A stretch of 64,000 nt of DNA from Phallusia mammillata (lineage: Eukaryota): contig OZ281497.1 of NCBI GenBank assembly GCA_965637545.1, positions 22,134,001-22,198,000 of the forward strand, in the 5' to 3' direction. Below, in pieces: positions 1-62,115 of this stretch. Both the position numbers and the translations under genes were made by a program. The notes beneath the pieces are model-generated. The model had not been told where the DNA came from. It worked only from the letters and a program-made list of their open reading frames with translations, and made no database searches. The number at the start of each line of letters is the position of its first letter. Positions within the stretch are counted from its first letter, which is position 1.

Positions 1-3000
1 GTTGGATTGAGTCAGGGCAAAACTTAAAACGAAATAGTCTTGTAAGAAACTTTTCGCTGTAATATCACGATTCTTTATTTCTGATCAATATTTAAATTGC
101 ATTATTGACAATGTGTCAGGACAAGGTTTAAACTTTGCAAAATCTTGCAACCTGGTATGAAGCAGTTTGTAATCTGTCGCTGCTCCATCGGTGATGAGAA
201 CTAGGACCTTATTGGCAAAATCTGCCCTTAATGATTGATTGAAATTGATCTAAACAAAATGAAAATACAGTCAACTTGTACTTTATAAGATGGTTAAATA
301 AATTTCACACTTGCAGCTACATATCTGTTTGTGTACTTCTTGGCCCTTATCAAATTTCTTCTGTTTGAACACCGGTATTTAAAACAACAAGTAACCGAAC
401 TTACTTTCACGGCACGTTCGATCGCCCTTGCAGTATAGGTATTGGCTGCTTTCAAATGCTTCATATTCATAAAAGAGTCTTGCAAACATTGGATTGTTTT
501 GCATTCACCAAGTTCAGTAGGCGATTGATAGTGAATTGGGCTCGTTGATAAATAAGTGAGGCTGAAAGCAAATTTTGAAAATAGTGTATGAAAAAATCAT
601 TTAGAAATGAAAGGTTACTTTCTGCCGTTTAACTGGCCATATTGAAGAACTCCAACTTGTAGGCAGGAACAAATGGAACGCGTGAAGCTCAAAGACGAAT
701 TAAGAAGACCTTCTCTGATTGTTTCGAAACTTGAAGAGCTTATTGAATTCGAAGAGTCCACAAGTAAAATCAGATCAGTGCTGTTTGGTTTGGGCGACGG
801 GTCTACAATGATAGAGTTACAACCGGTTTGTTGGTGGCTAATAACTCGCTGGTGGAAGTTATTTTACCAGTTGTAGGTACTTTGATGGTCGTTGTTGACT
901 CATTTACGGGTGTTGGTTTGTCGGTGGTTGTTGGTGTGAAGGTTGGTGTTTGCTCTGTTGTAAAATTCTTGCAGTCTGTATAACAACAGGTATATTCCTT
1001 TCAGGTCTATACGATTTCAAGCACTTTTTTATCTTCGTTGTTTAACCGGTCAAGGTTTATAGCGGTGGTACAGTTTATAAAGTATGTTTTTGTACAGCAA
1101 GAAACCAACCTGTGTCACAGTGTGGAACGACATGAGAGTAAATGTTAGTAAGAATGGATGGAAGTTGTTCAAAGGATCCCACTGTGGTTACTCTTTCATC
1201 AGATATTCCTCCATTGGCGCTTATTTGAAGTTGCTCATGGCTTACTCTTGTGCCAATTCCAATGACGTAGACGGTGACGTTGTTGGATTGAGTCAGGGCA
1301 AAACTTAAAACGAAATAGTCTTGTAAGAAACTTTTCGCTGTAATATCACGATTCTTTATTTCTGATCAATATTTAAATTGCATTATTGACAATGTGTCAG
1401 GACAAGGTTTAAACTTTGCAAAATCTTGCAACCTGGTATGAAGCAGTTTGTAATCTGTCGCTGCTCCATCGGTGATGAGAACTAGGACCTTATTGGCAAA
1501 ATCTGCCCTTAATGATTGATTGAAATTGATCTAAACAAAATGAAAATACAGTCAACTTGTACTTTATAAGATGGTTAAATAAATTTCACACTTGCAGCTA
1601 CATATCTGTTTGTGTACTTCTTGGCCCTTATCAAATTTCTTCTGTTTGAACACCGGTATTTAAAACAACAAGTAACCGAACTTACTTTCACGGCACGTTC
1701 GATCGCCCTTGCAGTATAGGTATTGGCTGCTTTCAAATGCTTCATATTCATAAAAGAGTCTTGCAAACATTGGATTGTTTTGCATTCACCAAGTTCAGTA
1801 GGCGATTGATAGTGAATTGGGCTCGTTGATAAATAAGTGAGGCTGAAAGCAAATTTTGAAAATAGTGTATGAAAAAAAATTTAGAAATGAAAGGTTACTT
1901 TCTGCCGTTTAACTGGCCATATTGAAGAACTCCAACTTGTAGGCAGGAACAAATGGAACGCGTGAAGCTTAAAGACGAATTAAGAAGACCTTCTCTGATT
2001 GTTTCAAAACTTGAAGAGCTTATTGAATTCGAAGAGTCCACAAGTAAAATCAGATCAGTGCTGTTTGGTTTGGGCGACGGGTCTACAATGATAGAGTTAC
2101 AACCGGTTTGTTGGTGGCTAATAACTCGCTGGTGGAAGTTATTTTACCAGTTGTAGGTACTTTGATGGTCGTTGTTGACTCATTTACGGGTGTTGGTTTG
2201 TCGGTGGTTGTTGGTGTGAAGGTTGGTGTTTGCTCTGTTGTAAAATTCTTGCAGTCTGTATAACAACAGGTATATTCCTTTCAGGTCTATACGATTTCAA
2301 GCACTTTTTTATCTTCGTTGTTTAACCGGTCAAGGTTTATAGCGGTGGTACAGTTTATAAAGTATGTTTTTGTACAGCAAGAAACCAACCTGTGTCACAG
2401 TGTGGAACGACATGAGAGTAAATGTTAGTAAGAATGGATGGAAGTTGTTCAAAGGATCCCACTGTGGTTACTCTTTCATCAGATATTCCTCCATTGGCGC
2501 TTATTTGAAGTTGCTCATGGCTTACTCTTGTGCCAATTCCAATGACGTAGACGGTGACGTTGTTGGATTGAGTCAGGGCAAAACTTAAAACGAAATAGTC
2601 TTGTAAGAAACTTTTCGCTGTAATATCACGATTCTTTATTTCTTATCAATATTTAAATTGCATTATTGACAATGTGTCAGGACAAGGTTTAAACTTTGCA
2701 AAATCTTGCAACCTGGTATGAAGCAGTTTGTAATCTGTCGCTGCTCCATCGGTGATGAGAACTAGGACCTTATTGGCAAAATCTGCCCTTAATGATTGAT
2801 TGAAATTGATCTAAACAAAATGAAAATACAGTCAACTTGTACTTTATAAGATGGTTAAATAAATTTCACACTTATAGCTACAAATCTGTTTGTGTACTTC
2901 TTGGCCCTTATCAAATTTCTTCAGTTTGAACACTGGTATTAAAAACAACAAGTAACTGAACTTACTTTCACGGCACGTTCGATCGCCCGTGCAGTATAGG

Positions 3001-6000
3001 TATTAGCTGCTTTTAAATGTATCATATTCATGAGAGAGTCTTGTAAACATCGGATTGTTCTGCATTCACCAAGTTCAGTAGGCGATTGATAGTGACTTGG
3101 GCTCGTTGATAAATAAGTGAGGCTGAAAGCAAATTTTGAAAATAGTGTATGAATTAAAAAAAAATTAGAAATGAAAGGTTACTTTCTGCCGTTTAATTGG
3201 CCATATTGAAGAACTCCAACTTGTAGGCAGGAACAAATCGAACGCGTGAAGCTTAAAGACGAATTAAGAAGACCTTCTCTGATTGTTTCAAAACTTGAAG
3301 AGCTTATTGAATTCGAAGAGTCCACAAGTAAAATCAGATCAGTGCTGTTTGGTTTGAACGACGGGTCTACAATGACAGAATTACAACCGGTTTGTTGATG
3401 GTGGCTAATAACTCGCTGATGGAAGGTATTTTACCAGTTGTAGGTACTTTGATGGTCGTTGTTGACTCATTTACGGGTGTTGGTTTGTCGGTGGTTGTTG
3501 GTGTGAAGGTTGGTGTTTGCTCTGTTGTAAAATTCTTGCAGTCTGTATAACAACAGGTATATTCCTTTCAGGTCTATACGATTTCAAGCACTTTTTATCT
3601 TCGTTGTTTAACCGGTCAAGGTTTATAGCGGTGGTACAGTTTATAAAGTATGTTTTTGTACAGCAAGAAACCAACCTGTGTCACAGTGTGGAACGACATG
3701 AGAGTAAATGTTAGTAAGAATGGATGGAAGTTGTTCAAAGGATCCCACTGTGGTTACTCTTTCATCAGATATTCCTCCATTGGCGCTTATTTGAAGTTGC
3801 TCTTGGCTTACTCTTGTGCCAATTCCAATGACGTAGACGGTGACGTTGTTGGATTGAGTCAGGGCAAAACTTAAAACGAAATAGTCTTGTAAGAAACTTT
3901 TCGCTGTAATATCACGATTCTTTATTTCTTATCAATATTTAAATTGCATTATTGACAATGTGTCAGGACAAGGTTTAAACTTTGCAAAATCTTGCAACCT
4001 GGTATGAAGCAGTTTGTAATCTGTCGCTGCTCCATCGGTGATGAGAACTAGGACCTTATTGGCAATATCTGCCCTTAATGATTGATTGAAATTGATCTAA
4101 ACAAAATGAAAATACAGTCAACTTGTACTTTATAAGATGGTTAAATAAATTTCACACTTATAGCTACAAATCTGTTTGTGTACTTCTTGGCCCTTATCAA
4201 ATTTCTTCAGTTTGAACACTGGTATTAAAAACAACAAGTAACTGAACTTACTTTCACGGCACGTTCGATCGCCCGTGCAGTATAGGTATTAGCTGCTTTC
4301 AAATGTATCATATTCATGAGAGAGTCTTGTAAACATCGGATTGTTTTGCATTCACCAAGTTCAGTAGGCGATTGATAGTGACTTGGGCTCGTTGATAAAT
4401 AAGTGAGGCTGAAAGCAAATTTTGAAAATAGTGTATGAATTAAAAAAAAATTAGAAATGAAAGGTTACTTTCTGCCGTTTAATTGGCCATATTGAAGAAC
4501 TCCAACTTGTAGGCAGGAACAAATCGAACGCGTGAAGCTTAAAGACGAATTAAGAAGACCTTCTCTGATTGTTTCAAAACTTGAAGAGCTTATTGAATTC
4601 GAAGAGTCCACAAGTAAAATCAGATCAGTGCTGTTTGGTTTGAACGACGGGTCTACAATGACAGAATTACAACCGGTTTGTTGATGGTGGCTAATAACTC
4701 GCTGATGGAAGGTATTTTACCAGTTGTAGGTACTTTGATGGTCGTTGTTGACTCATTTACGGGTGTTGGTTTGTCGGTGGTTATTGGTGTGAAGGTTGGT
4801 GTTTGCTCTGTTGTAAAATTCTTGCAGTCTGTATAACAGCAGGTATATTCCTTTCAGGTCTATACGATTTCAAGCACTTTTTTATCTTCGTTGTTTAACC
4901 GGTCAAGGTTTATAGCGGTGGTACAGTTTATAAAGTATGTTTTTGTACAGCAAGAAACCAACCTGTGTCACAGTGTGGAACGACATGAGAGTAAATGTTA
5001 GTAAGAATGGATGGAAGTTGTTCAAAGGATCCCACTGTGGTTACTCTTTCATCAGATATTCCTCCATTGGCGCTTATTTGAAGTTGCTCATGGCTTACTC
5101 TTGTGCCAATTCCAATGACGTAGACGGTGACGTTGTTGGATTGAGTCAGGGCAAAACTTAAAACGAAATAGTCTTGTAAGAAACTTTTCGCTGTAATATC
5201 ACGATTCTTTATTTCTTATCAATATTTAAATTGCATTATTGACAATGTGTCAGGACAAGGTTTAAACTTTGCAAAATCTTGCAACCTGGTATGAAGCAGT
5301 TTGTAATCTGTCGCTGCTCCATCGGTGATGAGAACTAGGACCTTATTGGCAAAATCTGCCCTTAATGATTGATTGAAATTGATCTAAACAAAATGAAAAT
5401 ACAGTCAACTTGTACTTTATAAGATGGTTAAATAAATTTCACACTTGCAGCTACATATCTGTTTGTGTACTTCTTGGCCCTTATCAAATTTCTTCTGTTT
5501 GAACACCGGTATTTAAAACAACAAGTAACCGAACTTACTTTCACGGCACGTTCGATCGCCCTTGCAGTATAGGTATTGGCTGCTTTCAAATGCTTCATAT
5601 TCATAAAAGAGTCTTGCAAACATTGGATTGTTTTGCATTCACCAAGTTTAGTAGGCGATTGATAGTGAATTGGGCTCGTTGATAAATAAGTGAGGCTGAA
5701 AGCAAATTTTGAAAATAGTGTATGAAAAAAAATTTAGAAATGAAAGGTTACTTTCTGCCGTTTAACTGGCCATATTGAAGAACTCCAACTTGTAGGCAGG
5801 AACAAATGGAACGCGTCAAGCTTAAAGACGAATTAAGAAGACCTTCTCTGATTGTTTCAAAACTTGAAGAGCTTATTGAATTCGAAGAGTCCACAAGTAA
5901 AATCAGATCAGTGCTGTTTGGTTTGGGCGACGGGTCTACAATGATAGAGTTACAACCGGTTTGTTGGTGGCTAATAACTCGCTGGTGGAAGTTATTTTAC

Positions 6001-9000
6001 CAGTTGTAGGTACTTTGATGGTCGTTGTTGACTCATTTACGGGTGTTGGTTTGTCGGTGGTTGTTGGTGTGAAGGTTGGTGTTTGCTCTGTTGTAAAATT
6101 CTTGCAGTCTGTATAACAACAGGTATATTCCTTTCAGGTCTATACGATTTCAAGCACTTTTTATCTTCGTTGTTTAACCGGTCAAGGTTTATAGCGGTGG
6201 TACAGTTTATAAAGTATGTTTTTGTACAGCAAGAAACCAACCTGTGTCACAGTGTGGAACGACATGAGAGTAAATGTTAGTAAGAATGGATGGAAGTTGT
6301 TCAAAGGATCCCACTGTGGTTACTCTTTCATCAGATATTCCTCCATTGGCGCTTATTTGAAGTTGCTCTTGGCTTACTCTTGTGCCAATTCCAATGACGT
6401 AGACGGTGACGTTGTTGGATTGAGTCAGGGCAAAACTTAAAACGAAATAGTCTTGTAAGAAACTTTTCGCTGTAATATCACGATTCTTTATTTCTTATCA
6501 ATATTTAAATTGCATTATTGACAATGTGTCAGGACAAGGTTTAAACTTTGCAAAATCTTGCAACCTGGTATGAAGCAGTTTGTAATCTGTCGCTGCTCCA
6601 TCGGTGATGAGAACTAGGACCTTATTGGCAATATCTGCCCTTAATGATTGATTGAAATTGATCTAAACAAAATGAAAATACAGTCAACTTGTACTTTATA
6701 AGATGGTTAAATAAATTTCACACTTATAGCTACAAATCTGTTTGTGTACTTCTTGGCCCTTATCAAATTTCTTCAGTTTGAACACTGGTATTAAAAACAA
6801 CAAGTAACTGAACTTACTTTCACGGCACGTTCGATCGCCCGTGCAGTATAGGTATTAGCTGCTTTCAAATGTATCATATTCATGAGAGAGTCTTGTAAAC
6901 ATCGGATTGTTTTGCATTCACCAAGTTCAGTAGGCGATTGATAGTGACTTGGGCTCGTTGATAAATAAGTGAGGCTGAAAGCAAATTTTGAAAATAGTGT
7001 ATGAATTAAAAAAAAATTAGAAATGAAAGGTTACTTTCTGCCGTTTAATTGGCCATATTGAAGAACTCCAACTTGTAGGCAGGAACAAATCGAACGCGTG
7101 AAGCTTAAAGACGAATTAAGAAGACCTTCTCTGATTGTTTCAAAACTTGAAGAGCTTATTGAATTCGAAGAGTCCACAAGTAAAATCAGATCAGTGCTGT
7201 TTGGTTTGAACGACGGGTCTACAATGACAGAATTACAACCGGTTTGTTGATGGTGGCTAATAACTCGCTGATGGAAGGTATTTTACCAGTTGTAGGTACT
7301 TTGATGGTCGTTGTTGACTCATTTACGGGTGTTGGTTTGTCGGTGGTTATTGGTGTGAAGGTTGGTGTTTGCTCTGTTGTAAAATTCTTGCAGTCTGTAT
7401 AACAGCAGGTATATTCCTTTCAGGTCTATACGATTTCAAGCACTTTTTTATCTTCGTTGTTTAACCGGTCAAGGTTTATAGCGGTGGTACAGTTTATAAA
7501 GTATGTTTTTGTACAGCAAGAAACCAACCTGTGTCACAGTGTGGAACGACATGAGAGTAAATGTTAGTAAGAATGGATGGAAGTTGTTCAAAGGATCCCA
7601 CTGTGGTTACTCTTTCATCAGATATTCCTCCATTGGCGCTTATTTGAAGTTGCTCATGGCTTACTCTTGTGCCAATTCCAATGACGTAGACGGTGACGTT
7701 GTTGGATTGAGTCAGGGCAAAACTTAAAACGAAATAGTCTTGTAAGAAACTTTTCGCTGTAATATCACGATTCTTTATTTCTTATCAATATTTAAATTGC
7801 ATTATTGACAATGTGTCAGGACAAGGTTTAAACTTTGCAAAATCTTGCAACCTGGTATGAAGCAGTTTGTAATCTGTCGCTGCTCCATCGGTGATGAGAA
7901 CTAGGACCTTATTGGCAAAATCTGCCCTTAATGATTGATTGAAATTGATCTAAACAAAATGAAAATACAGTCAACTTGTACTTTATAAGATGGTTAAATA
8001 AATTTCACACTTGCAGCTACATATCTGTTTGTGTACTTCTTGGCCCTTATCAAATTTCTTCTGTTTGAACACCGGTATTTAAAACAACAAGTAACCGAAC
8101 TTACTTTCACGGCACGTTCGATCGCCCTTGCAGTATAGGTATTGGCTGCTTTCAAATGCTTCATATTCATAAAAGAGTCTTGCAAACATTGGATTGTTTT
8201 GCATTCACCAAGTTTAGTAGGCGATTGATAGTGAATTGGGCTCGTTGATAAATAAGTGAGGCTGAAAGCAAATTTTGAAAATAGTGTATGAAAAAAAATT
8301 TAGAAATGAAAGGTTACTTTCTGCCGTTTAACTGGCCATATTGAAGAACTCCAACTTGTAGGCAGGAACAAATGGAACGCGTCAAGCTTAAAGACGAATT
8401 AAGAAGACCTTCTCTGATTGTTTCAAAACTTGAAGAGCTTATTGAATTCGAAGAGTCCACAAGTAAAATCAGATCAGTGCTGTTTGGTTTGGGCGACGGG
8501 TCTACAATGATAGAGTTACAACCGGTTTGTTGGTGGCTAATAACTCGCTGGTGGAAGTTATTTTACCAGTTGTAGGTACTTTGATGGTCGTTGTTGACTC
8601 ATTTACGGGTGTTGGTTTGACGGTGGTTGTTGGTGTGAAGGTTGGTGTTTGCTCTGTTGTAAAATTCTTGCAGTCTGTATAACAACAGGTATATTCCTTT
8701 CAGGTCTATACGATTTCAAGCACTTTTTATCTTCGTTGTTTAACCGGTCAAGGTTTATAGCGGTGGTACAGTTTATAAAGTATGTTTTTGTACAGCAAGA
8801 AACCAACCTGTGTCACAGTGTGGAACGACATGAGAGTAAATGTTAGTAAGAATGGATGGAAGTTGTTCAAAGGATCCCACTGTGGTTACTCTTTCATCAG
8901 ATATTCCTCCATTGGCGCTTATTTGAAGTTGCTCATGGCTTACTCTTGTGCCAATTCCAATGACGTAGACGGTGACGTTGTTGGATTGAGTCAGGGCAAA

Positions 9001-12000
9001 ACTTAAAACGAAATAGTCTTGTAAGAAACTTTTCGCTGTAATATCACGATTCTTTATTTCTTATCAATATTTAAATTGCATTATTGACAATGTGTCAGGA
9101 CAAGGTTTAAACTTTGCAAAATCTTGCAACCTGGTATGAAGCAGTTTGTAATCTGTCGCTGCTCCATCGGTGATGAGAACTAGGACCTTATTGGCAAAAT
9201 CTGCCCTTAATGATTGATTGAAATTGATCTAAACAAAATGAAAATACAGTCAACTTGTACTTTATAAGATGGTTAAATAAATTTCACACTTATAGCTACA
9301 AATCTGTTTGTGTACTTCTTGGCCCTTATCAAATTTCTTCAGTTTGAACACTGGTATTAAAAACAACAAGTAACTGAACTTACTTTCACGGCACGTTCGA
9401 TCGCCCGTGCAGTATAGGTATTAGCTGCTTTTAAATGTATCATATTCATGAGAGAGTCTTGTAAACATCGGATTGTTCTGCATTCACCAAGTTCAGTAGG
9501 CGATTGATAGTGACTTGGGCTCGTTGATAAATAAGTGAGGCTGAAAGCAAATTTTGAAAATAGTGTATGAATTAAAAAAAAATTAGAAATGAAAGGTTAC
9601 TTTCTGCCGTTTAATTGGCCATATTGAAGAACTCCAACTTGTAGGCAGGAACAAATCGAACGCGTGAAGCTTAAAGACGAATTAAGAAGACCTTCTCTGA
9701 TTGTTTCAAAACTTGAAGAGCTTATTGAATTCGAAGAGTCCACAAGTAAAATCAGATCAGTGCTGTTTGGTTTGAACGACGGGTCTACAATGACAGAATT
9801 ACAACCGGTTTGTTGATGGTGGCTAATAACTCGCTGATGGAAGGTATTTTACCAGTTGTAGGTACTTTGATGGTCGTTGTTGACTCATTTACGGGTGTTG
9901 GTTTGTCGGTGGTTATTGGTGTGAAGGTTGGTGTTTGCTCTGTTGTAAAATTCTTGCAGTCTGTATAACAGCAGGTATATTCCTTTCAGGTCTATACGAT
10001 TTCAAGCACTTTTTTATCTTCGTTGTTTAACCGGTCAAGGTTTATAGCGGTGGTACAGTTTATAAAGTATGTTTTTGTACAGCAAAAAACCAACCTGTGT
10101 CACAGTGTGGAACGACATGAGAGTAAATGTTAGTAAGAATGGATGGAAGTTGTTCAAAGGATCCCACTGTGGTTACTCTTTCATCAGATATTCCTCCATT
10201 GGCGCTTATTTGAAGTTGCTCATGGCTTACTCTTGTGCCAATTCCAATGACGTAGACGGTGACGTTGTTGGATTGAGTCAGGGCAAAACTTAAAACGAAA
10301 TAGTCTTGTAAGAAACTTTTCGCTGTAATATCACGATTCTTTATTTCTTATCAATATTTAAATTGCATTATTGACAATGTGTCAGGACAAGGTTTAAACT
10401 TTGCAAAATCTTGCAACCTGGTATGAAGCAGTTTGTAATCTGTCGCTGCTCCATCGGTGATGAGAACTAGGACCTTATTGGCAAAATCTGCCCTTAATGA
10501 TTGATTGAAATTGATCTAAACAAAATGAAAATACAGTCAACTTGTACTTTATAAGATGGTTAAATAAATTTCACACTTGCAGCTACATATCTGTTTGTGT
10601 ACTTCTTGGCCCTTATCAAATTTCTTCTGTTTGAACACCGGTATTTAAAACAACAAGTAACCGAACTTACTTTCACGGCACGTTCGATCGCCCTTGCAGT
10701 ATAGGTATTGGCTGCTTTCAAATGCTTCATATTCATAAAAGAGTCTTGCAAACATTGGATTGTTTTGCATTCACCAAGTTCAGTAGGCGATTGATAGTGA
10801 ATTGGGCTCGTTGATAAATAAGTGAGGCTGAAAGCAAATTTTGAAAATAGTGTATGAAAAAAAATTTAGAAATGAAAGGTTACTTTCTGCCGTTTAACTG
10901 GCCATATTGAAGAACTCCAACTTGTAGGCAGGAACAAATGGAACGCGTCAAGCTTAAAGACGAATTAAGAAGACCTTCTCTGATTGTTTCAAAACTTGAA
11001 GAGCTTATTGAATTCGAAGAGTCCACAAGTAAAATCAGATCAGTGCTGTTTGGTTTGGGCGACGGGTCTACAATGATAGAGTTACAACCGGTTTGTTGGT
11101 GGCTAATAACTCGCTGGTGGAAGTTATTTTACCAGTTGTAGGTACTTTGATGGTCGTTGTTGACTCATTTACGGGTGTTGGTTTGTCGGTGGTTGTTGGT
11201 GTGAAGGTTGGTGTTTGCTCTGTTGTAAAATTCTTGCAGTCTGTATAACAACAGGTATATTCCTTTCAGGTCTATACGATTTCAAGCACTTTTTATCTTC
11301 GTTGTTTAACCGGTCAAGGTTTATAGCGGTGGTACAGTTTATAAAGTATGTTTTTGTACAGCAAGAAACCAACCTGTGTCACAGTGTGGAACGACATGAG
11401 AGTAAATGTTAGTAAGAATGGATGGAAGTTGTTCAAAGGATCCCACTGTGGTTACTCTTTCATCAGATATTCCTCCATTGGCGCTTATTTGAAGTTGCTC
11501 TTGGCTTACTCTTGTGCCAATTCCAATGACGTAGACGGTGACGTTGTTGGATTGAGTCAGGGCAAAACTTAAAACGAAATAGTCTTGTAAGAAACTTTTC
11601 GCTGTAATATCACGATTCTTTATTTCTTATCAATATTTGATATTGCATTATTGACAATGTGTCAGGAAAAAGGTTTAAACTTTGCAAAATCTTGCAACCT
11701 GGTATGAAGCAGTTTGTAATCTGTCGCTGCTCCATCGGTGATGAGAACTAGGACCTTATTGGCGAAATCTGCCCTTAATGATTGATTGAAATTGATCTAA
11801 ACAAAACGACAACATAGTCAACTTGTACGTTATGTGGTGGTTCAATTATTTTCACATGTATTGCTTCATATCCACTCGTTAACTTCTTGGTCCTTATCCT
11901 GTGTCTTTTGTTTAAACACCGATATTAAAAACAACAATCAATCGAACTTACTTTCACGGCACGTTCGATCGCCCTTGCAGTATAGGTATTAGCTGCTTTT

Positions 12001-12353
12001 AAGTGCTTCATATTCATAAAAGAGTCTTGTATACATCGGATTGTTTTGCATTCACCAAGATCAGTAGGCGATTGATAGTGACTTGGGCTCGTTGATAAAT
12101 AAGTGAGGCTGAAAACAAATTTTGAAAATAGTGTATGAATTTATACAAAATTTAGAAATGAAAGGTTACTTTCTGCCGTTTAGGTTGCCATATTGAAGAA
12201 CTCCAACTTGTAGGCAGGAACAAATGGAACGCGTAAAGCTCAAAGACGAATTAAGAAGGCATTCTCTGATTGTTTCAAAACTTGAAGAGCTTATTGAATT
12301 CGAAGAGTCCACAAGTAAAATCAGATCAGTGCTGTTTTTCTCGAATGAGAAAG
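1..12353. repeat. Intragenic tandem array: nine ~1.28-kb near-identical units plus a divergent partial tenth
   Basis: The anchor gttggattgagtc recurs at 1, 1282, 2562, 3848, 5135, 6414, 7701, 8980, 10267 and 11546. Unit lengths are 1281, 1280, 1286, 1287, 1279, 1287, 1279, 1287 and 1279. Confidence 0.98.
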
Positions 12354-15300
12354 CTGTAAAATGTTGTCACAGAATCAAAATAAGCACTAGTCTTACGCAA
12401 CCGAGGACTATTAGTAATTCTGGATTCGCCAAGTTATGGCTTTTGCTTCGTGAAGCTTTGTTATATATTGTCGTACAGACAGTTTAGGTTTAATTCCATA
12501 GCCTTGGTTTGCTTGCCCCATCCTGAAAGTTTACTGCTATCACTCCTAAGGAGGTGATATAGTAACATCTGTCTGCTGCCAAAGTTACTATTTGTATAAT
12601 CCCGCTTTTCCGTCTGAATCGCATAACATCCATGTCGCAAAACAAAGCTTTGTTGAAAGCTATACAAATCGCGCTCAATAAAAGGTTAATAAACACCGTT
12701 TGTTCCAGTTTACCTTAAACACATTTGTCAAGTTTACTTTCATGGTTGCAAAAAATACAAGCGGAAAACCCGGCCCTATATTTGGCCCTAACGTTAGTAA
12801 TAACGTAAGGGCCAGGCCCTAACTGAACCCGTTTAATTTAAACTGTAGCGCGAACACGACCAGCACAAAATTCCAAAAACAAAACTCCTCACCTTTTAGT
12901 GGCACGCAAACGCAAACAAGTAAGATTGCCCTGTACATTAGTATCAAGTCCATTGATAAGCTATTCCCAAACTTCATTAAACGCTTGATAACTAATACTC
13001 AGTGATTAGTCATTCTAATTCAGTTGTTTAACATTTTTCATCCAACCTAAATCAAACGAATAATAATCTGTTTCAATATAAATCAGGCCATCTAGTTCTG
13101 GTAATGTTCAAAAACTATGTACAATAGTTAAAGGCAAATCGCAATAAATAACTTTGATACATAAAACTTCGGCGGGTTTGCTATGGCGTAAGACCTAACA
13201 TGAATCAAACAGCAAACGTTGCTAGAAGCGTAAACAGTAGGCAATCTTGTGCAACAGGATCAACCCGTCAGTTCCGTCTGGAATCAAACAACACAAACAA
13301 ACCTACGCAGAAACAGCACACAACAATTAGGTGCCCAAATCAAAGCTGTAGGTCGGTACGGGCTTTTCGGGCCTGGTTAGAGTTCTGGTCGTGTTCGGGC
13401 CGGGTTCGGGCTAATGTCAAACACCTCTGAAACGCCTTTTTCGAGACCAATTGTCAATTATTATCTATTGTGTTTGTTGTTTTGGTCTTTCCTGGGACTT
13501 CAATGTATAGGCCTGTCAATCAAATTTTCGGGCTTTAACGGGCTTCTCGAAATCAAATCGGGCTTGGGCCGGTTTCGGGCTCCAATTTCAATTTTCATGT
13601 CCTAACCACCGAAAAAGTTATTTGAGTTTGTGAGTTTTTTGTGACTCCTATTCAAATACCACATTGTATCCGGTCGGCAATACTGTAAACAACAGAATTG
13701 TTGTTAGTAATGAAGCTCGAACTCATGTAAACTGTGTGGTTATCTATTTGAATCTGCAAGTGGGCCGAAGCACACTCATACATATTTTCCTGTACGTATT
13801 TATCAGGAAACACGCAGTTGCAAATAGTTCAACCTGGTTTACACAAGTGGCAGTTAAAATAGGTACATTTGCATGCAATATTATTGCACAATAATTTACA
13901 TACAATATTATTTGTGTGTACTAAAATTTCCAAAGGTAGCTGTTTTTAATTTGTCGTTGGGAGATTTGTTCAGTGCGCTTTTACACATGCCATTCTTTAA
14001 AGAAACAAGATTTAATTCTATGTGCTGTTCCTTCAATCACTACACAACACAATATATTTCAACGCTACAGATAAGGTATTGTGCACAGATTAGTAGCAAA
14101 AGCACAGCACCTTGTATTTGTGTAAATAGTTTTCTGAATTTGTAAATAATGGTTTAACAAACCAACTTGTCTAAAGTATTTTTTAGAGCATCGGAAATTT
14201 TTGATCTGCTCAGAGGCGTTGAGAAACGACAAATAAACTCCAACCATGGCTAGCGGCAGCCAAAAAATTGCAAAAATACCGATAGGCGACGCAAAAGCAC
14301 CCGTACTAATTTCAAAGTTTAGCAGGAATTTTGCTGAATGGTTCGGTGCGCCTGATCCATATGCAGTCATGAAAAAGAGCTGTTCACATTGTTTAAACTC
14401 ACGGTTGTCTATTGAATTCGAAGAGTCGTCAAGTAAAAAGTATGGTAATCAAAGTTATGTTACCTGCCAGCTGTGCGCACACACAAACAAGTAACGCAGT
14501 CCAGAACATTCGAATAAATTACATTGCAGGATTACACTTTCTGTTGAACTTTATTAAAAACTGAACTCAATAATTTTAGAAATCGGATAACAACTCGAAT
14601 TCGTTTTCAAGAATGTTGCGACTGCGACTTATATAGGAAAGTCAAACACACTGTAAAAATATTTTTATCAGAGTAGGGCCAGAGTGGAGCAGCTACTTTT
14701 ATCAGTAAAGGTCAACTTTGTGTGGTTTGCAATTACGCACAACCTTATGCAATAAGTTATAAGAGCGTATCCGGCACAAACAGTGAGCTGGCTAATTCAA
14801 CAGAACCAACCGGTCATGGCGGTGTGTATGGTCGCCTGGGATCACACAATTTAACATAAACCACGCGGGAACAATATCCAATATTTAAATCATTAGAAGC
14901 TTAAACTGGTTATACTTCTTAATTGTAATAAATATACAGGGATATTTACATAAACTCCGACTTTCATTCGACGCGACGAACAAAAATATCCCTTCGGTCT
15001 GGATTTGGCCTTTTTACGCAGTGCTTAAGACTATGCAAGTTAACTACCTAAGTGGACGAACGGTATGCATGTTTGCATAATAATGAAAGCAGGCAAGGGT
15101 TTAAAAAGTTATTAAACTGAAAGAACCTCGGTATTGTAACACATAATGCACACACAAAACTTTGCTTAATATTTCTGTATATCAGTAACTGTATTTTTTT
15201 GCAACTGTATGTTATTTGTGCAAGAGATATCCTCTGGCGGCAGTTCCATTTCAAAAGCAATGTATGGCTTTTCAAAACTGCGTCGGTTTGAGCTATTGCA

Positions 15301-16853
15301 TCCGGCATATAAATCTCAAACTCATGTATTTGTAATTCCGAACTCCGCAAGTGGCGTAGGCACACTAATATATTTTTTCTTTCACATTGCCAGTAAACAA
15401 ATATGCTGGTCAAAGACAAAACAGAGCAACCAGAATTAAATCAGTGTACATTATTTGCAATCAGGGCATAGTTTTGAAAAAGAGTTCCACCAATATTTAA
15501 TTTTAGATTTCCTTTTGTTTAACTAGGTACAAGTCTGTGAACATTTCTTCCATTTCTGAAATTCCTCTTGCCAGGTTTTAAGAGCCTCGCGATATTCTCT
15601 AAAAACGAAAAAAGGTTAAAAATGAGCACCATCGACACGTCTGTTTCGTTTACTTTTTAATTTAATAAGTAATGAACACTTTTAGAAGACTATGTTTGAC
15701 ATTTTGTTTAGGTTATATCTTACCTTACAATGTTGGTCTCACTGCATAGTTGGGGTTTACTAGTTGTAAAACCACTGGTTGTTGATGGTGGTTCAGTACT
15801 TGTTGATGGTTTACTACTTGACGATGTTTTAATGGTTGTTGACGACGTACTGGTTGTTGATGGTTCGCTGGTTATTGACGGTTCAGTTGTTATTATTGCT
15901 TCACTGCTAGTTGATGATCCATCGATTGTTGATGGTTGAACGGTTGTTGGCGTTTCAAAGGTTGTTGACTGTTCACTAGTTGTTGCTAGTTCACTGGTAG
16001 TTGTAGGTCCATCGATTGTTGATGGTTGAATGGTTGTTGGTGTTTTAAAGGTAGTTGATGGTTCACTGGTTGTTATTACTGTTTCACTGGTAGTTGATGG
16101 TCCATCGATTGTTGATGGTTGAATGGTCGTTGGTGTTTCAATGGTTTTTGATGGTTCACTGGTTATTATTGTTTCGCTGCTAGTTGATTGTTCATCGATT
16201 GTTGAGGGTTGAATAGTTGTTGGTGTTTCAAAGGTTGTTGATGGTTCACTGGTTGTTGCTAGTTCACTTGTAGTTGACGGTTCACTGGTTGTTATTACTG
16301 TTTCACTGCTAGTTGATGGTCCATCGATTGTTGATGGTTGAATGGTCGTTGGTGTTTCAATGGGTTTTGATGGTTCACTGGTTATTATTGCTTCTCTGCT
16401 AGTTGATTGTTCATCGATTGTTGATGGCTGAATGGTCGTGGGTGTTTCAATGGTTTTTGATGGTTTACTGGTTATTATTGTTTCACTGGTAGTTGTAGGT
16501 TCATCGATTGTGGATGGTTGAATGATTGTTGGTGTTTTAAAGGTAGTTGACGGTTCACTGGTTATTATTGTTTCGCTGCTAGTTGATTGTTCATCGTTTG
16601 TTGGTGGTTGAATTGTTGTTGGTGTTTCACTGGTTGTTGATAGTTCACTGGTTATTGACGGTTCAGTTGTTAATAATGTTTCACTGGTAGTTGTAGGTCC
16701 ATCGATTGTTGATGGTTGAATTGTTGTTTGTGTTTCACTGGTGTTTGCTGATCGTTCTGTAGTTGTTAATTGTGGTAAAGCTAGAAGTGAACAGGAATTA
16801 GTTAATGTGTGAAATGATACGAGGTACAGGACAACATATACATTGAATTGCAT
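1..16853 (-). CDS. Giant secreted mucin-VWA repeat protein (signal peptide, PTS mucin region, linker, >=10 tandem VWA domains); 3' partial at window edge
   Basis: Manual splicing on the minus strand. Exon 15724-16853 starts MQFNVYVVLYLVSFHTLTNSCS (signal-like) and continues into PTS repeats. It is followed by exon 15531-15598 and then the first VWA exon starting at 12353. Per repeat (unit 1 coordinates) the exons are 619-802, 405-561, 152-249, 1110-1303 and 868-975. All introns are GT-AG and the phases join (741 nt = 247 aa). VWA motifs: DLILLVDSSNS, VGVLQYG, NTYTARAI, KVLVLITDG, VYVIGIG. The join from 15531 to 12353 is phase-compatible but the donor is weak. Confidence 0.85.
14380..14465 (-). 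pseudogene. Degenerate VWA MIDAS exon remnant
   Basis: 14410-14438 matches the array MIDAS exon at 27 of 29 nt. It reads LLDDSSNSIDNREF against the array LLVDSSNSISSSSF. There is an in-frame TGA or 1-nt frameshift just upstream. Confidence 0.55.
15724..16780 (-). repeat. Coding PTS mucin minisatellite, about nine ~30-aa units
   Basis: The QP(S/P)T(I/N)D core occurs 9 times in the 399-aa ORF 15720-16919, with interspersed TTSEPS/TTSELA subunits. Confidence 0.95.
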
Positions 16854-17024
16854 AAATGTTACGGTTAAAGTCAATGAACCGCTTTCTGAAGACATTAACT
16901 TGAAATAGGTTTGATGCATTAGAACTGAAACTACTGTGTTAACAGTGACACAAACAAAATTTTTGAGAGCACTGCACTGGCTTAGAAGACATCAACATTT
17001 GCACATTAAACTAATTTAGCCATC

Positions 17025-18690
17025 GTAATAGCCCAGTAAATCTATATCGAAAAAAATTAAAAAGGTTTAATTTCCCTACAACTTTCAATAAAGTTCTAAC
17101 CTGTTTGTATTCCACCAACAAAGAAAAGTAACATTGCAAAGTAAATTCGAGTCAACTCCATTTTTGTACACCTGTCCTACAAAACTCGTAGCTTTTCACA
17201 CAAAATTACAGACCGTCGCTTCCAACGGAACGTTTAGATAGTAGAACCGACAAGAATCAACTACCGGAAAGTTTCTTTATTCACATGTACCGAACAGCGC
17301 ATACCACAAGTGAAAGAGTTCTGTGAATTTGGAAACGCTTGTTTTCCCAACGCCTCTTAGACCGTTGTAAAAGGATGTCACAAGGTATACCTTGTGACAT
17401 CCTTTTACAACGGTCTAAGAGACAATTATAATTGTATCTTTCGTCGGAACACGCAGCACAATAAATCTGCGCCTCGTGACGAAACCTGAGTTGTATAGAC
17501 TGAGAACATTTATTTTACTCCAGTCTATTCCGTAAATTACTTCCCTGGAAAAAACTTTATGTATAATCATTATGTTACTTGTGATAAAATAAACGCGCAT
17601 AACCAAGCGCTGAAAATTTATGTACAGTGTAATTTTAACATAATATACAATTATACAGTATCACAATGCGACATTATATATATAATCGTAGACTCATAAA
17701 CTCTTGTGTGGGATATTTCAAAGTTAAACAATAACCGTGGTTTTGTCGGTCTCTCGAAACTCCAAGCGGAAAATTAAAAGTGACGAACACCGAAAATCGG
17801 CAATACAGGTTGATATGCACGTAAAAAATACGTTGTGCTAATACTATACGATTAAAAAGTTGATGTGATGACTACAAAAACAGCCTTAAATTTGCCCTAA
17901 ACAGGTCATAAAGAACATTAAAGGCTTACGCGGTAAGTATCGCAGTCTCTCGGGAGGATGAAACTTGTTTCGCTGAGGAGAAATCCCCTTTTACCAGTGC
18001 TAGGTTTTCAATGGCAATACCTACGTAGGAAAGAAAGGAAAAGGGCTTGTGTCGTTTGCCCCAATATGAGCCTTGCTTTTCGTCTTTAACCGACAGTTTA
18101 GCTTTTCAATAGCTCTATTCTAAACTTTTTTCATATATTTTCGGTTTTTAATTTGATTAAACGTAAAAACTCATTATTAACTTAATTCTATTACACATAG
18201 ATAGACTATAACAAAGCCACATTCTAACAACGGTTCCCACAATTTAGGCAAATTGTCCTCGTGCAAACGTTCAGTACAGTAACGTTGGCATTAGCGTCCA
18301 AATCTTACTCAAAAACTTTTATGTAGGTAAGATAAAGTAAGCAAAATTATCGGAAAAAGGCAAACCCCTGAGATCGGGCAAAACGGTCTAAAACAAAGAA
18401 AACACAGTAACAGCCATGATCCAGCATGAAAGGTAAATGTATTTGGTATTGTTAAGTCGGGAACTTCGAAAAGAACTAATATTGTTAAATTTTTTTGTTA
18501 TTTGCTTCGAGACCAGAAACGAATTATCGTTCGAAACACAAAAATGCATATACGAAGCGAACGCTCTTTTAGAAGATTTGGTTAACCCATGGTTAACAAA
18601 GCGAACGCTCTTTTAGCTGTGTTATGACAACTGTCAGTTGGAAAGGTATCAACCGTCGCTGTTCCCAGTTGGCAGCAGGAAAGCAGACTT
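17025..18690. repeat. Segmental duplication module X, copy 1 (copy 2 at 28793-30426)
   Basis: Collinear and highly similar from ttagccatcgtaata to ggcagcaggaaagcagactt. The ORFs 17415-17606 and 29152-29337 are near-identical. Confidence 0.95.
17354..17421. repeat. Perfect 68-bp palindrome (34-bp arms, no spacer)
   Basis: ctcttagaccgttgtaaaaggatgtcacaaggta is followed immediately by its exact reverse complement. Confidence 0.97.
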
Positions 18691-28792: not shown

Positions 28793-30426
28793 TAATTAGC
28801 CATCGTAATAACCCAGTAAATTTATATTGAAAAAAATTGAAAAGGTTTAACTTTTAATAATGTTCTAACCTGTTTGTATTCCACCAACAAAGAAAAGTAA
28901 CATCGCAAAGTAAATTCGAGTCAACTCATTTTTAAACAAGTACACCTGTCCTACAAAACTCGTAGCTTTTCACACAAAATTACAGACCGTCGCTCCCAAC
29001 GGAACGTTTAGATAGTAGAACCGACAAGAATCAACTACCGGAAAGTTTCTTTATTCACATGTACCGAACAGCGCTTACCACAAGTGAAAGAGTTCTGTGA
29101 ATTTGGAAACGCTTGTTTTCCCAACGCCTCTTAGACCTTTGTAAAAGGGTGTCACAAGGTAATTTTATCTTTCGCCGGAACACGCAGCACAATAAATCTG
29201 CTCCTCGTGACGAAACCTGAGTTGTATAGACTGAGAACATTTATTTTACTCCAGTATATTCCGTAAATTACTTCCCTGGAAAAAACTTTATGTATAATCA
29301 TTATGTTACTTGTGATAAAATAAACGCGCATAACCAAGCGCTGAAAATTTATGTACAGTGTAATTTTAACATAATATACAATTATACAGTATCATAATGC
29401 GACATTATACATATAATCGTAGACTCATAAACTCTTGTATGAGATATTTCTAAGTGAAACAACAACTGTGGTTTTGTCGGTCTCTCGAAACTCCAAGCGG
29501 AGAATTGAAAGTGACGAACACCGAAAATCGGCAATACAGGTTGATATGCACGTAAAAAATACGTTGTGCTAATACTATACGATTAAAAAGTTGATGTGAT
29601 GACTACAAAAACAGCCTTAAATTTGCCCTAAACAGGACATAAAGAACATTAAAGGCTTACGCGGGAAGTACCGCAGTCTCTCGGGAGAATAAAACTTGTT
29701 TCGCTGAGAAGAAATCCCCTTTTACCAGTGCTAGGTTTTCAATGGCAATACCTACGTAGGAAAGAAAGGAAAAGGGCTTGTGTCGTTTGCCCCATTATGA
29801 GCCTTGCTTTTCGTCTTTAACCAACAGTTTAATCAAGCTTTTCAATAGCTGTATTCTAAACTTTTTTCATATATTTTCGGTTTTTAATTTGATTTAACGT
29901 AAAAACTCATTATTAACTTAATTATATTACACATAGATAGACTATAACAAAGCCACATTCTAACAACGGTTCCCACAATTTAGGCAAATTGTCCTCGTGC
30001 AAACGTTCAGTACAGTAACGTTGGCATTAGCGTCCAAATCTTACTCAAAAACTTTAATGTAGGTAAGATAAAGTAAGCAAAATTATCGGAAAAAGGCAAA
30101 CCCCTGAGATCGGGCAAAACGGTCTAAAACAAAGAAAACACAGTAACAGCTATGATCCAGCATGAAAGGTAAATGTATTTGGTATTGTTAAGTCGGGAAC
30201 TTCAAAAAGAAATAATATTGTTAAATTTTTTTGTTATTTGCTTCGAGACCAGAAACGAATTATCGTTCGAAACACAAATGCATATACGAAGCGAACGCTC
30301 TTTTAGAAGATTTGGTTAACCCATGGTTAACAAAGCGAACGCTCTTTTAGCTGTGCGATGACAACTGTCAGCTGGAAAGGTGTCAACCGTCGCTGTTCCC
30401 AGTTGGCAGCAGGAAAGCAGACTTAA
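28793..30426. repeat. Segmental duplication module X, copy 2
   Basis: Matches 17025-18690. It then jumps to a copy of 20278-20970 (30430-31158). Confidence 0.95.
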
Positions 30427-61932: not shown

Positions 61933-62115
61933 NNNNNNNNNNNNNNNNNNNNNNNNNNNNNNNNNNNNNNNNNNNNNNNNNNNNNNNNNNNNNNNNNNNN
62001 NNNNNNNNNNNNNNNNNNNNNNNNNNNNNNNNNNNNNNNNNNNNNNNNNNNNNNNNNNNNNNNNNNNNNNNNNNNNNNNNNNNNNNNNNNNNNNNNNNNN
62101 NNNNNNNNNNNNNNN
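61933..62115. other. Assembly gap (183 N)
   Basis: Run of N. Confidence 1.

What the first reader, a model, noticed from the sequence alone, without database searches (positions are those of the whole stretch)
1..16853. Hidden giant mucin-VWA polyprotein encoded by a tandem array of five-exon VWA cassettes
Seen: what looks like a 1.28-kb satellite splices on the minus strand into 247-aa modules. Each module is a VWA domain with complete MIDAS residues (DSSNS, T in NTYT, D in TDG), 6 Cys, and a 36-aa Thr/Pro linker exon bounded by phase-1 introns. Upstream lie a signal-like peptide and a ~340-aa PTS region. Known: VWA MIDAS binds a divalent cation and mediates adhesion (integrin I domains, matrilins, collagen VI). 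Inference: a secreted multivalent adhesive, mucus or tunic scaffold of well over 2700 aa. I do not recognise an architecture of mucin stalk plus >=10 near-identical VWA domains from any named family.
Basis: partly seen in the sequence, partly recalled or inferred. Interest (0 to 1): 0.7.

Follow-up and report, generated by a model that had tools for sequence, protein, structure and literature searches.

The report
Giant secreted chain of integrin-type VWA domains
A sea-squirt gene that looks like a 1.28-kb satellite is really transcribed and spliced into a secreted protein of about 7,000 residues made of 28 almost identical metal-binding adhesion domains of the kind found in integrins, which makes it a natural "free" and highly multivalent version of the integrin I domain.

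Summary
The 1.28-kb repeat is a five-exon cassette on the minus strand. RNA-derived contigs from three runs carry all five predicted junctions as a closed 741-nt (247-aa) cycle; the DNA run carries none.

The array continues 23.7 kb left of the window: 28 cassettes and 141 exons, all AG/GT. One frame stays open for 6,967 aa: signal peptide, 28 VWA modules with 36-aa Thr/Pro linkers, and a short Ser/Thr tail. DSSNS is intact in 27 of 28 modules.

One part of the reading is wrong. The upstream signal peptide and 350-aa PTS stretch form a separate 397-aa mucin-like gene with its own stop, and it is out of frame with the VWA exons. The VWA gene has its own signal exon at 12953-12893, which is shared with two single-domain paralogs.

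New here: the module is an integrin alpha-I-type VWA. It is up to 70% identical, exon by exon, to I-domain exons of this genome's integrin alpha genes, with matching exon ends. In trees it groups with tunicate I domains.

Long VWA chains are known (collagen VI, a 6,024-aa amphioxus protein), so this is a new variant of a known kind. Its function as a multivalent, cation-dependent adhesive or cross-linker is inferred. Earlier scan notes describe other VWA giants on other DNA of this genome.

The parts
1..12353 (-). Window part of the tandem array: 9.6 of the 28 five-exon cassettes. The rest lies left of the window, down to window -23754, which is G000:C4:22110247.
   Evidence: unit 1279-1289 bp; every exon has AG/GT and no stop.
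12893..12953 (-). Exon 1 of the giant gene: ATG plus signal peptide MDLILMYRAILLVCVCVPLK, 61 nt, phase-1 donor. It joins in frame to the first VWA exon at 12353.
   Evidence: Homologous signal exons sit in front of both single-VWA paralogs. There is no RNA coverage of this single-copy exon, so the junction is inferred.
12170..12353 (-). First B-type exon (start of VWA module 1, DSSNS). Its 5' end differs from the internal B exons (FSFEKNST instead of PSPKPNST).
619..802 (-). Exon B of a reference unit: beta1-alpha1-beta2 of the VWA, with MIDAS D-x-S-x-S (DSSNS) and the Cys pair SICSC.
   Evidence: Pfam PF00092 positions 1-46, E 5e-4. Aligns to collagen VI alpha-3 VWA domains. RNA joints.
405..561 (-). 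Exon C: tunicate-type loop with Cys pair (GECKTIQC) and the MIDAS Thr region (NTYTARAIERAVK).
   Evidence: 70% identical to the matching I-domain exon of the integrin alpha gene at C8:912269-912427. RNA joints.
152..249 (-). Exon D: beta4 with MIDAS Asp (LITDG).
   Evidence: RNA joints 11796>11952 and 11567>11699 on the equivalent unit.
1110..1303 (-). Exon E: C-terminal third of the VWA, 194 nt. The true acceptor is ttttaag|TTTTGCC.
   Evidence: RNA joint 11567>11699. Pfam PF00092 positions 127-172. Aligns to VWF A3.
868..975 (-). Exon A: 36-aa Thr/Pro linker (14 Thr, 5 Pro, 2 N-glycan sequons), with a phase-1 intron on each side.
   Evidence: RNA joints 11240>11374 and 11067>11133.
15523..17161 (-). 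Separate neighbouring gene: a 397-aa secreted mucin-like protein. Signal exon 17161-17101, PTS exon 16780-15724, last exon 15598-15523 ending in TAG; ATTAAA at 15501.
   Evidence: There is no RNA evidence either way.
14400..14522 (-). Decayed relic of a paralog start: a signal-like exon (MFWTALLVCVCAQLA) followed by a fragment of a B exon (..DDSSNSI..) with stops.
   Evidence: B-like match at 14471-14288, no AG/GT, 2 stops.

Best explanation
This is one real, transcribed gene of a sea squirt on the minus strand.

Gene structure: it starts at its own signal-peptide exon (window 12953-12893). It then runs through 28 tandem copies of a VWA domain, each split over four exons. A 36-aa Thr/Pro linker exon lies between successive domains. 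It ends about 24.1 kb left of the window in a short Ser/Thr-rich tail.

Product: the joined model is a secreted protein of 6,967 residues with about 194 N-glycan sequons, O-glycan-type linkers, no membrane anchor and no cleavage sites. It is a beads-on-a-string chain of 28 nearly identical domains.

Domain type: the domain is of the integrin alpha-I type. It shares the exon structure and up to 70% of exon residues with the I domains of this genome's integrin alpha genes. It keeps the five MIDAS residues that hold Mg2+ and bind an acidic residue of a ligand.

Likely origin (inferred): I-domain exons left an integrin gene and became a small secreted single-domain gene. Two such paralogs lie nearby. 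The cassette was then amplified by unequal crossing-over.

Likely function (inferred, not shown): each domain binds weakly, and 28 in a row bind by avidity. The protein would then glue or cross-link a repetitive ligand such as collagen-like matrix, or possibly complement-tagged particles, in a cation-dependent way.
For: Splicing and transcription:
- All five junction types, closed into a 741-nt cycle, are seen in contigs of three runs and are absent from the DNA run.

Intact gene:
- 141 exons all have AG/GT, and the frame is open for 6,967 aa up to a stop that is conserved in paralog 2.
- Exons are 98.4% identical between units and introns 96.6%. There are 83 synonymous against 84 non-synonymous codon differences, roughly dN/dS 0.3.
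- DSSNS is intact in 27 of 28 units.

Secreted:
- There is an N-terminal signal peptide, no other hydrophobic stretch and no furin site.

Own start:
- Signal exons homologous to 12953-12893 precede both single-VWA paralogs. The 3' flank of the giant gene is 82-88% identical to that of paralog 2.

Integrin type:
- The Ciona integrin P0081 matches exon B at 47% and exon E at 44%.
- Own-genome integrin genes on C8 carry collinear B, C, D and E exons with the same ends. Identities are 52/70/60/46%.
- A profile of the family scores Ciona and Clavelina I domains at 215-226 bits. The collagen VI-like and other multi-VWA proteins fetched up to then score 71 bits or less.
- In the tree, tunicate alpha-I-type domains form a clade at 100/100. 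The giant family sits next to two of this genome's integrins at 98/95. The AU test rejects a clade of all integrin I domains without them, p = 0.0004.

Background from papers:
- MIDAS residues are conserved in tunicate I domains (PMC4237329).
Against: - No read shows the single-copy ends. The signal exon to first VWA exon junction, the tail exon and the full 28-unit transcript are all inferred. RNA depth was about 5-9 for the collapsed repeat, so it would be below 1 per single-copy exon.
- The RNA label of runs X1-X3 is the tool's guess. I rely on the intron-less contigs themselves.
- Tissue, stage, ligand and metal dependence are all untested.
- The tree uses own-genome domains pieced together from tblastn segments, 187 columns, and only leukocyte-type vertebrate I domains.
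- Tunicate integrins as a single clade was rejected only weakly (p = 0.028; p = 0.22 in a smaller set), and that group was named after seeing the tree.
- No fold was predicted.
Confidence: 0.8

Rival explanations
1. One reading: one protein in which the upstream signal peptide and the 350-aa PTS stalk are the N-terminus of the VWA chain (mucin stalk plus VWA array).
For: The two lie on the same strand, 2.6 kb apart. RNA contigs cover neither gene's single-copy exons, so a join is not excluded by reads. A weak phase-1 donor (CTT|GTACCT at 15530) inside the last PTS-gene exon could in principle reach the first VWA exon in frame.
Against: The PTS donor is phase 2 and the first VWA exon needs phase 1, so the direct join gives a stop after about 9 codons. 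The in-frame continuation ends in TAG, followed by ATTAAA. The VWA gene has its own in-frame signal exon, which is conserved in both paralogs. The promoter and signal exon of the PTS gene are duplicated on their own at 28796-30236.
Confidence: 0.08
2. A recently blown-up, selectively unimportant array: transcribed, but with copy number and product of no particular use, on its way to decay like paralog 2.
For: Units are 96-100% identical, introns included, so the expansion or its homogenisation is recent. Paralog 2 carries a TGA in its B exon, and a relic lies at 14400-14522. The B-exon search against 1.84 billion proteins found no close multi-copy relative.
Against: There is not one stop, frameshift or lost splice site in 141 exons over 36 kb. 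Non-synonymous changes are under-represented. MIDAS is kept in 27 of 28 units. Spliced transcripts occur in three runs.
Confidence: 0.08
3. Same gene, different job: a humoral immune factor. In this reading a soluble chain of complement-receptor-like I domains clumps or masks C3-tagged particles, rather than serving as a structural adhesive or matrix.
For: The domain groups with integrin I domains, and in this tree the vertebrate ones are the leukocyte type: alpha-M, D, X and E. From my own knowledge, not checked here: ascidian I-domain integrins on blood cells have been reported to act as C3 receptors.
Against: There is no expression or binding data. No vertebrate collagen-receptor I domains were in my tree, so the grouping with leukocyte-type domains is not informative. 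A paper attributes collagen binding to a tunicate I domain (PMC12422189).
Confidence: 0.15

Closest known systems
Tunicate integrin alpha-chain I domains (Ciona XP_078489660 and its isoform X1, Clavelina integrin alpha-2-like, and this genome's integrin genes at C8:0.89-0.92 Mb)
   Same: It is the same VWA subtype. There are four exons with the same ends, exon identities are 40-70%, and both share the Cys pair in the exon-C loop, DSSNS, the TARAIERAVK motif and TDG.
   Different: It is not inserted in a beta-propeller, and there are no FG-GAP, Ig-like, membrane or cytoplasmic parts. No I/LEGT-type internal ligand was seen after the last helix. It has extra Cys residues (SICSC, HC, DC). It is repeated 28 times behind a signal peptide.
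Collagen VI alpha-3 N-terminal VWA array (PDB 9han; PMC3919171 'beads on a string')
   Same: It is a secreted chain of many VWA domains in a row. Exon B aligns to several of its domains.
   Different: Collagen VI has up to about 12 diverged VWA domains, a collagen triple helix and other C-terminal domains. Here there are 28 near-identical domains, Thr/Pro linkers and no Gly-X-Y region. Sequence identity is only about 30%, and it falls in the outgroup in trees.
Amphioxus uncharacterised protein LOC144905190 (XP_078660839, 6,024 aa; a B. belcheri member of its cluster is named 'biological adhesion')
   Same: It is a giant of similar size with 20-21 VWA stretches. It was the best total score in the search of 1.84 billion proteins.
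   Different: Identity is only about 32%, and its domains fall with the collagen VI-like outgroup. Its repeats are not near-identical.
Mussel byssus proximal thread matrix protein 1 (PDB 4cn8)
   Same: It is a secreted VWA-only adhesive or matrix protein of a marine invertebrate. Exon E gives a weak match (E 0.07).
   Different: It has two VWA domains rather than 28, and the similarity is distant.
Gel-forming mucins and von Willebrand factor
   Same: It is a large secreted glycoprotein with O-glycan-type Thr/Pro stretches and, as in VWF, A-type domains.
   Different: The 141 exons hold no VWD, C8, TIL, VWC or cystine-knot modules, and there is no long PTS domain. The long PTS stretch next door belongs to another gene.

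Membership tests
VWA domain (Pfam PF00092) | Sequence match to the family profile across the domain | tested here: met
   Searched exon by exon only. Exon B matches profile positions 1-46 (20.7 bits, E 5e-4). Exon E matches positions 127-172 (19.7 bits, E 1e-3). Each is below the 23.8-bit cut-off on its own because it is only a third of a domain. The four exons are collinear with I domains of annotated integrins that carry PF00092. The joined module was not scanned.
VWA domain with functional MIDAS | D-x-S-x-S, a Thr about 70 residues on, and an Asp after beta4 | tested here: met
   DSSNS is present in 27 of 28 modules (module 27 has DSSNL), and NTYT and LITDG are also present. Metal binding itself was not tested.
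Integrin alpha-I-type VWA (domain class) | Groups with integrin I domains rather than with other VWA domains | tested here: met
   Family profile scores: Ciona and Clavelina I domains 215-226 bits; collagen VI-like and other multi-VWA proteins 71 bits or less; vertebrate I domains fetched later 27-57 bits. Vertebrate plus tunicate alpha-I clade 96/93. Tunicate clade including the module 100/100. AU test p = 0.0004 against a clade of integrin I domains without it. Caveat: limited sampling.
Integrin alpha-I-type VWA (domain class) | Same intron positions as the I-domain exons of integrin alpha genes | tested here: met
   Exon ends coincide (..QYGQLNGR | LTYLS..RAIERAVK | ID..) in three integrin genes of the same genome. 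A Ciona isoform skips exactly the C and D equivalents.
Integrin alpha subunit (the protein family) | I domain inserted in a seven-bladed FG-GAP beta-propeller, followed by Ig-like domains, a membrane span and a tail | tested here: not met
   All 141 exons are accounted for as signal, VWA, linker or tail. The only hydrophobic stretch is the signal peptide. A tblastn search with an integrin finds propeller exons on C8 but none at this locus.
Gel-forming mucin / VWF family | VWD-C8-TIL assemblies, a C-terminal cystine knot and a long PTS domain | tested here: not met
   The gene model holds no exons other than those listed. The 350-aa PTS stretch is a separate gene.
Collagen VI and FACIT-like VWA collagens | A Gly-X-Y triple-helical region | tested here: not met
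   Gly is 4.5% of the joined model, and there is no exon outside the cassette types. These proteins fall in the outgroup in trees.

The most novel reading that the evidence does not exclude
The integrin I domain, generally treated as a domain that entered integrins once and stayed there, has in sea squirts left the integrin again. It founded families of secreted proteins. One of these was amplified to a 28-mer that works as a free, purely avidity-driven chain of I domains. That would be a natural experiment on what an I domain does without the rest of the integrin.
Probability: 0.45. Interest if true: 0.7.

Novelty: new variant of a known kind. Interest (0 to 1): 0.56.

Why it matters
1. It shows that a stretch which any repeat masker would call a satellite is a 36-kb coding array. 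This is a caution for the annotation of this and similar genomes. No close relative of exon B turned up in a library of 1.84 billion proteins, which suggests the gene has not been modelled.

2. It gives integrin research a free-standing, naturally multimerised alpha-I-type domain with intact MIDAS. It comes from the animal group where I domains first appear. This bears on how the domain bound ligands before the vertebrate collagen motifs arose (avidity model, PMC12422189).

3. A chain of 28 identical Mg2+-dependent binding modules on glycosylated spacers is a simple design for a reversible, cation-switchable biological glue or gel.

Tried and rejected
- My first exon E boundary was wrong. I used acceptor cgaaaag|T (221 nt, giving a 256-aa module). 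The RNA joint 11567>11699 rejects it, as does a stop in the last unit.
- The acceptor attacag|C breaks the frame.
- Exons C, D and A give no Pfam hit on their own. Exon C gives only chance matches in the PDB.
- The word-index protein search reaches few relatives: 4, 7 and 26 hits. No vertebrate collagen-receptor I domains were obtained.
- The first, smaller tree did not reject integrin monophyly (p = 0.22).
- Conservation could not be used to find the 3' exons, because flanks and exons are equally alike between the giant gene and paralog 2.
- RNA evidence for the 5' and 3' ends and for the PTS gene is absent, because single-copy exons lie below assembly depth.
- Paper searches found no description of this protein.
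- Searches were done exon by exon, by reference. The joined model was used only inside local scripts for the frame check, counts, alignment and trees.
Full report
**1. What is in the sequence**

- Window 1-12353 is filled by direct repeats spaced 1279-1287 bp.
- The window is G000:C4:22134001-22198000. I fetched the 60 kb to its left.
- There the same unit continues to window -23754. That gives 28 units over 36 kb, 96-100% identical in the middle and 84-92% at the two ends.
- On the minus strand each unit holds five open pieces flanked by AG and GT. Across all 28 units none has a stop or a lost splice signal.

**2. Is it spliced?**

One search for runs found four small runs of one study (X1-X4), each holding about 5% of the sampled words, and two DNA runs holding 84%. 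I laid X1, X2, X3 and DNA run X6 on window 10870-15800.

- The three small runs carry contigs of 771, 610, 374 and 293 nt. These skip 11068-11132 (65 nt), 11241-11373 (133 nt), 11568-11698 (131 nt) and 11797-11951 (155 nt).
- All skips have GT..AG ends on the minus strand.
- A further joint runs from 10884 back to 12108, which is the B-to-C junction of a tandem transcript.
- Together the exons close into a cycle of 157 + 98 + 194 + 108 + 184 = 741 nt, or 247 codons.
- X6 covers the introns and shows none of these joints.

The joints also fixed the fifth exon at 194 nt (acceptor ttttaag|T). My own first guess of 221 nt was wrong. The tool only guesses that X1-X3 are RNA, so the intron-less contigs are my evidence. 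Depth was 5-9 for the collapsed repeat. Single-copy exons, at roughly one 28th of that, would not assemble. The silence over 12190-15800 therefore says nothing.

**3. The whole gene**

In a local script I joined the following exons:
- the signal exon 12953-12893;
- 28 sets of B, C, D and E exons;
- 27 linker exons;
- a tail exon (window -23914 onward).

The result is 141 exons, all AG/GT, with one frame open for 6,967 codons. The layout is:
- a 20-aa signal peptide (MDLILMYRAILLVCVCVPLK);
- 27 modules of 247 aa and a last one of 211 aa;
- a 68-aa Ser/Thr-rich tail ending ..TTGKPLSRR.

The stop, and an in-frame 3-nt difference just before it, are shared with paralog 2. The model has 171 Cys (6 per module), 194 N-x-S/T sequons, 13% Thr, no furin-like site and no hydrophobic stretch other than the signal peptide. 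The 5' and 3' junctions are inferred and were not seen in reads.

**4. The PTS stretch is another gene**

- The exons are 17161-17101 (signal peptide MELTRIYFAMLLFFVGGIQT), 16780-15724 (352 codons; the whole protein is 28% Thr, 17% Ser and 10% Pro) and 15598-15523.
- They read through to a TAG, and an ATTAAA follows 22 nt later. The product is 397 aa.
- The PTS donor leaves two bases, while the first VWA exon needs one. Joining them gives a stop after about nine codons.
- The VWA gene's own signal exon has homologues in front of two single-VWA paralogs, at window -35566 and -40380.
- The giant gene's 3' flank is 82-88% identical to that of paralog 2 over 3.4 kb.

The giant is therefore a member of a small 'signal - one VWA - tail' family whose middle was amplified. 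Paralog 1 looks intact. Paralog 2 has a TGA at the end of its B exon. A weak phase-1 donor inside the last PTS-gene exon leaves a small chance of an occasional fusion transcript.

**5. What kind of VWA**

Searches were done exon by exon, by reference.

- Pfam VWA matches exon B (profile positions 1-46) and exon E (positions 127-172).
- The PDB gives collagen VI alpha-3 for exon B and VWF A3 for exon E.
- The full HMMER search of 1.84 billion proteins with exon B gave 82 hits. All high scorers were long multi-VWA proteins at 25-39% identity: amphioxus XP_078660839 (6,024 aa, 20 stretches) and collagen VI-like chains. There was no close giant relative.
- The best single stretch was a Ciona integrin alpha chain, at 47% over exon B and 44% over exon E. 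The two matches are adjacent in an isoform that skips exactly the equivalents of exons C and D.
- In this genome, integrin alpha genes on contig C8 carry their I domain in four exons with the same ends as B, C, D and E. Identities are 52/70/60/46% for the gene at 913 kb and 46/62/60/49% for the gene at 897 kb.
- Propeller and Ig-like exons follow those I-domain exons in order, so they are integrin genes.
- Own-genome searches with exons C and E also found further non-integrin copies of this domain type, on C4 (20.87, 20.95 and 27.10 Mb) and C1 (3.95-4.28 Mb).

**6. Trees**

The inputs were:
- domains pieced from exon peptides (own genome);
- I domains cut from Ciona, Clavelina and ten vertebrate integrins;
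- collagen VI-like and related outgroups.

A profile of the family scored Ciona and Clavelina I domains at 215-226 bits. The other multi-VWA proteins scored 71 bits or less, and vertebrate I domains scored 27-57 bits.

The careful tree (187 columns) gave:
- vertebrate plus tunicate alpha-I-type domains, 96/93;
- the tunicate clade, 100/100;
- within it, the giant family plus the other non-integrin copies (95/92), next to the two C8 integrins (98/95). Ciona, Clavelina and a third own-genome integrin lie outside that group.

The AU tests gave:
- a clade of all integrin I domains that excludes the non-integrin copies is rejected, p = 0.0004;
- a clade of the tunicate integrins alone is rejected only weakly, p = 0.028 (p = 0.22 in the smaller set), and I named that group after seeing the tree.

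If the I domain entered integrins once, before tunicates and vertebrates split (PMC4237329, PMC12422189), the module descends from an integrin I domain that left the integrin. This is the best-supported reading, but sampling is thin.

**7. How the array evolves**

- Between units, exons are 98.4% identical and introns 96.6%.
- Differences from the consensus are 83 synonymous and 84 non-synonymous codons. With about three times more non-synonymous sites, this indicates purifying selection.
- Units 2-7 and 14-19 alternate between two variants. Next-but-one units are 99.9-100% alike and neighbours about 97.5%. This marks a two-unit higher-order repeat typical of unequal crossing-over.
- In the DNA run, single unitigs over the exons have 14-23 times the depth of the unique flank. 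This fits many copies, although the tool warns that depth is not a copy number.

**8. Mechanism**

Shown:
- a spliced transcript of the cassette;
- an intact frame;
- a signal peptide;
- MIDAS motifs (DSSNS in 27 of 28 modules, NTYT, TDG);
- glycan-rich spacers.

Inferred:
- Each module binds a ligand's acidic residue through Mg2+, as I domains do (PMC4237329).
- Twenty-eight modules on flexible O-glycosylated spacers turn weak binding into strong, cation-dependent adhesion or cross-linking by avidity. That mode is attributed to a tunicate I domain binding collagen (PMC12422189).
- Ligand and tissue are unknown. Only one of the five studies among the listed runs holds the transcript, and sample names are coded.

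**9. Comparison with the known, and novelty**

- Long VWA chains are known, so this is not a new kind.
- It differs from collagen VI (no triple helix), from mucins and VWF (no VWD or cystine knot), and from integrins (no propeller or membrane span).
- It is unusual in domain type, copy number and near-identity of copies.
- I found no paper describing it.
- Earlier notes of this scan name the genome Phallusia mammillata. They also describe other VWA giants and integrin-like VWA families elsewhere in it.
- I did not verify the species name. The closest annotated proteins, from Ciona and Clavelina, fit a sea squirt.

**10. Left out**

It was used only in local scripts.

Noticed in passing
window 15523-17161 (-): A separate small secreted mucin-like gene of 397 aa. 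It has a signal peptide, about 350 aa of degenerate 6-aa/18-nt Thr/Ser/Pro repeats with longer 90-219-nt periods, and a 25-aa C-terminus with Cys residues.
   Followed up: partly
window 28796-30236 (-) versus 17016-18500: The promoter region and signal exon of the PTS gene are duplicated at 93% identity. No Thr-rich open frame follows within the next 2.8 kb, so this may be the start of a different gene or a dead copy.
   Followed up: partly
window 13345-13674: A very high-copy dispersed repeat rich in GCCCGAA-type motifs. DNA-run depth here is about 300 times that of the unique flank, and it is also present in the RNA-like runs.
   Followed up: no
window 14400-14522 (-): A relic of a paralog start: a signal-like exon plus a decayed fragment of a DSSNS exon, lying between the PTS gene and the giant gene.
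   Followed up: partly
left of window: window -35566..-36975 and -40380..-42190 (L009, L010): Two single-VWA paralogs with homologous signal exons. The first looks intact (an in-frame 3-nt loss in exon D). The second has a TGA at the end of exon B. The second, with its flanks, is a segmental duplicate of the giant gene's ends.
   Followed up: partly
L029-L030 (G000:C4:20950001-20966000, +): Four near-identical copies, 3.3 kb apart, of a related four-exon alpha-I-type VWA with DSTSS in place of DSSNS. Each is followed by a Thr-rich open frame. They may be separate genes or a second, looser concatemer. Many more copies lie on C1:3.95-4.28 Mb.
   Followed up: partly
RNA contigs of three runs show it spliced out, and no retained form was seen at this low depth.
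   Followed up: partly
G000:C8:885001-935000 (L024-L028): A cluster of at least three integrin alpha genes or gene heads with I domains lies on one strand within 50 kb. A 46-nt stretch of one I-domain exon is still 87% identical in DNA to the giant gene's exon B.
   Followed up: partly
window 61933-62115: A run of 183 N (assembly gap or masked).
   Followed up: no
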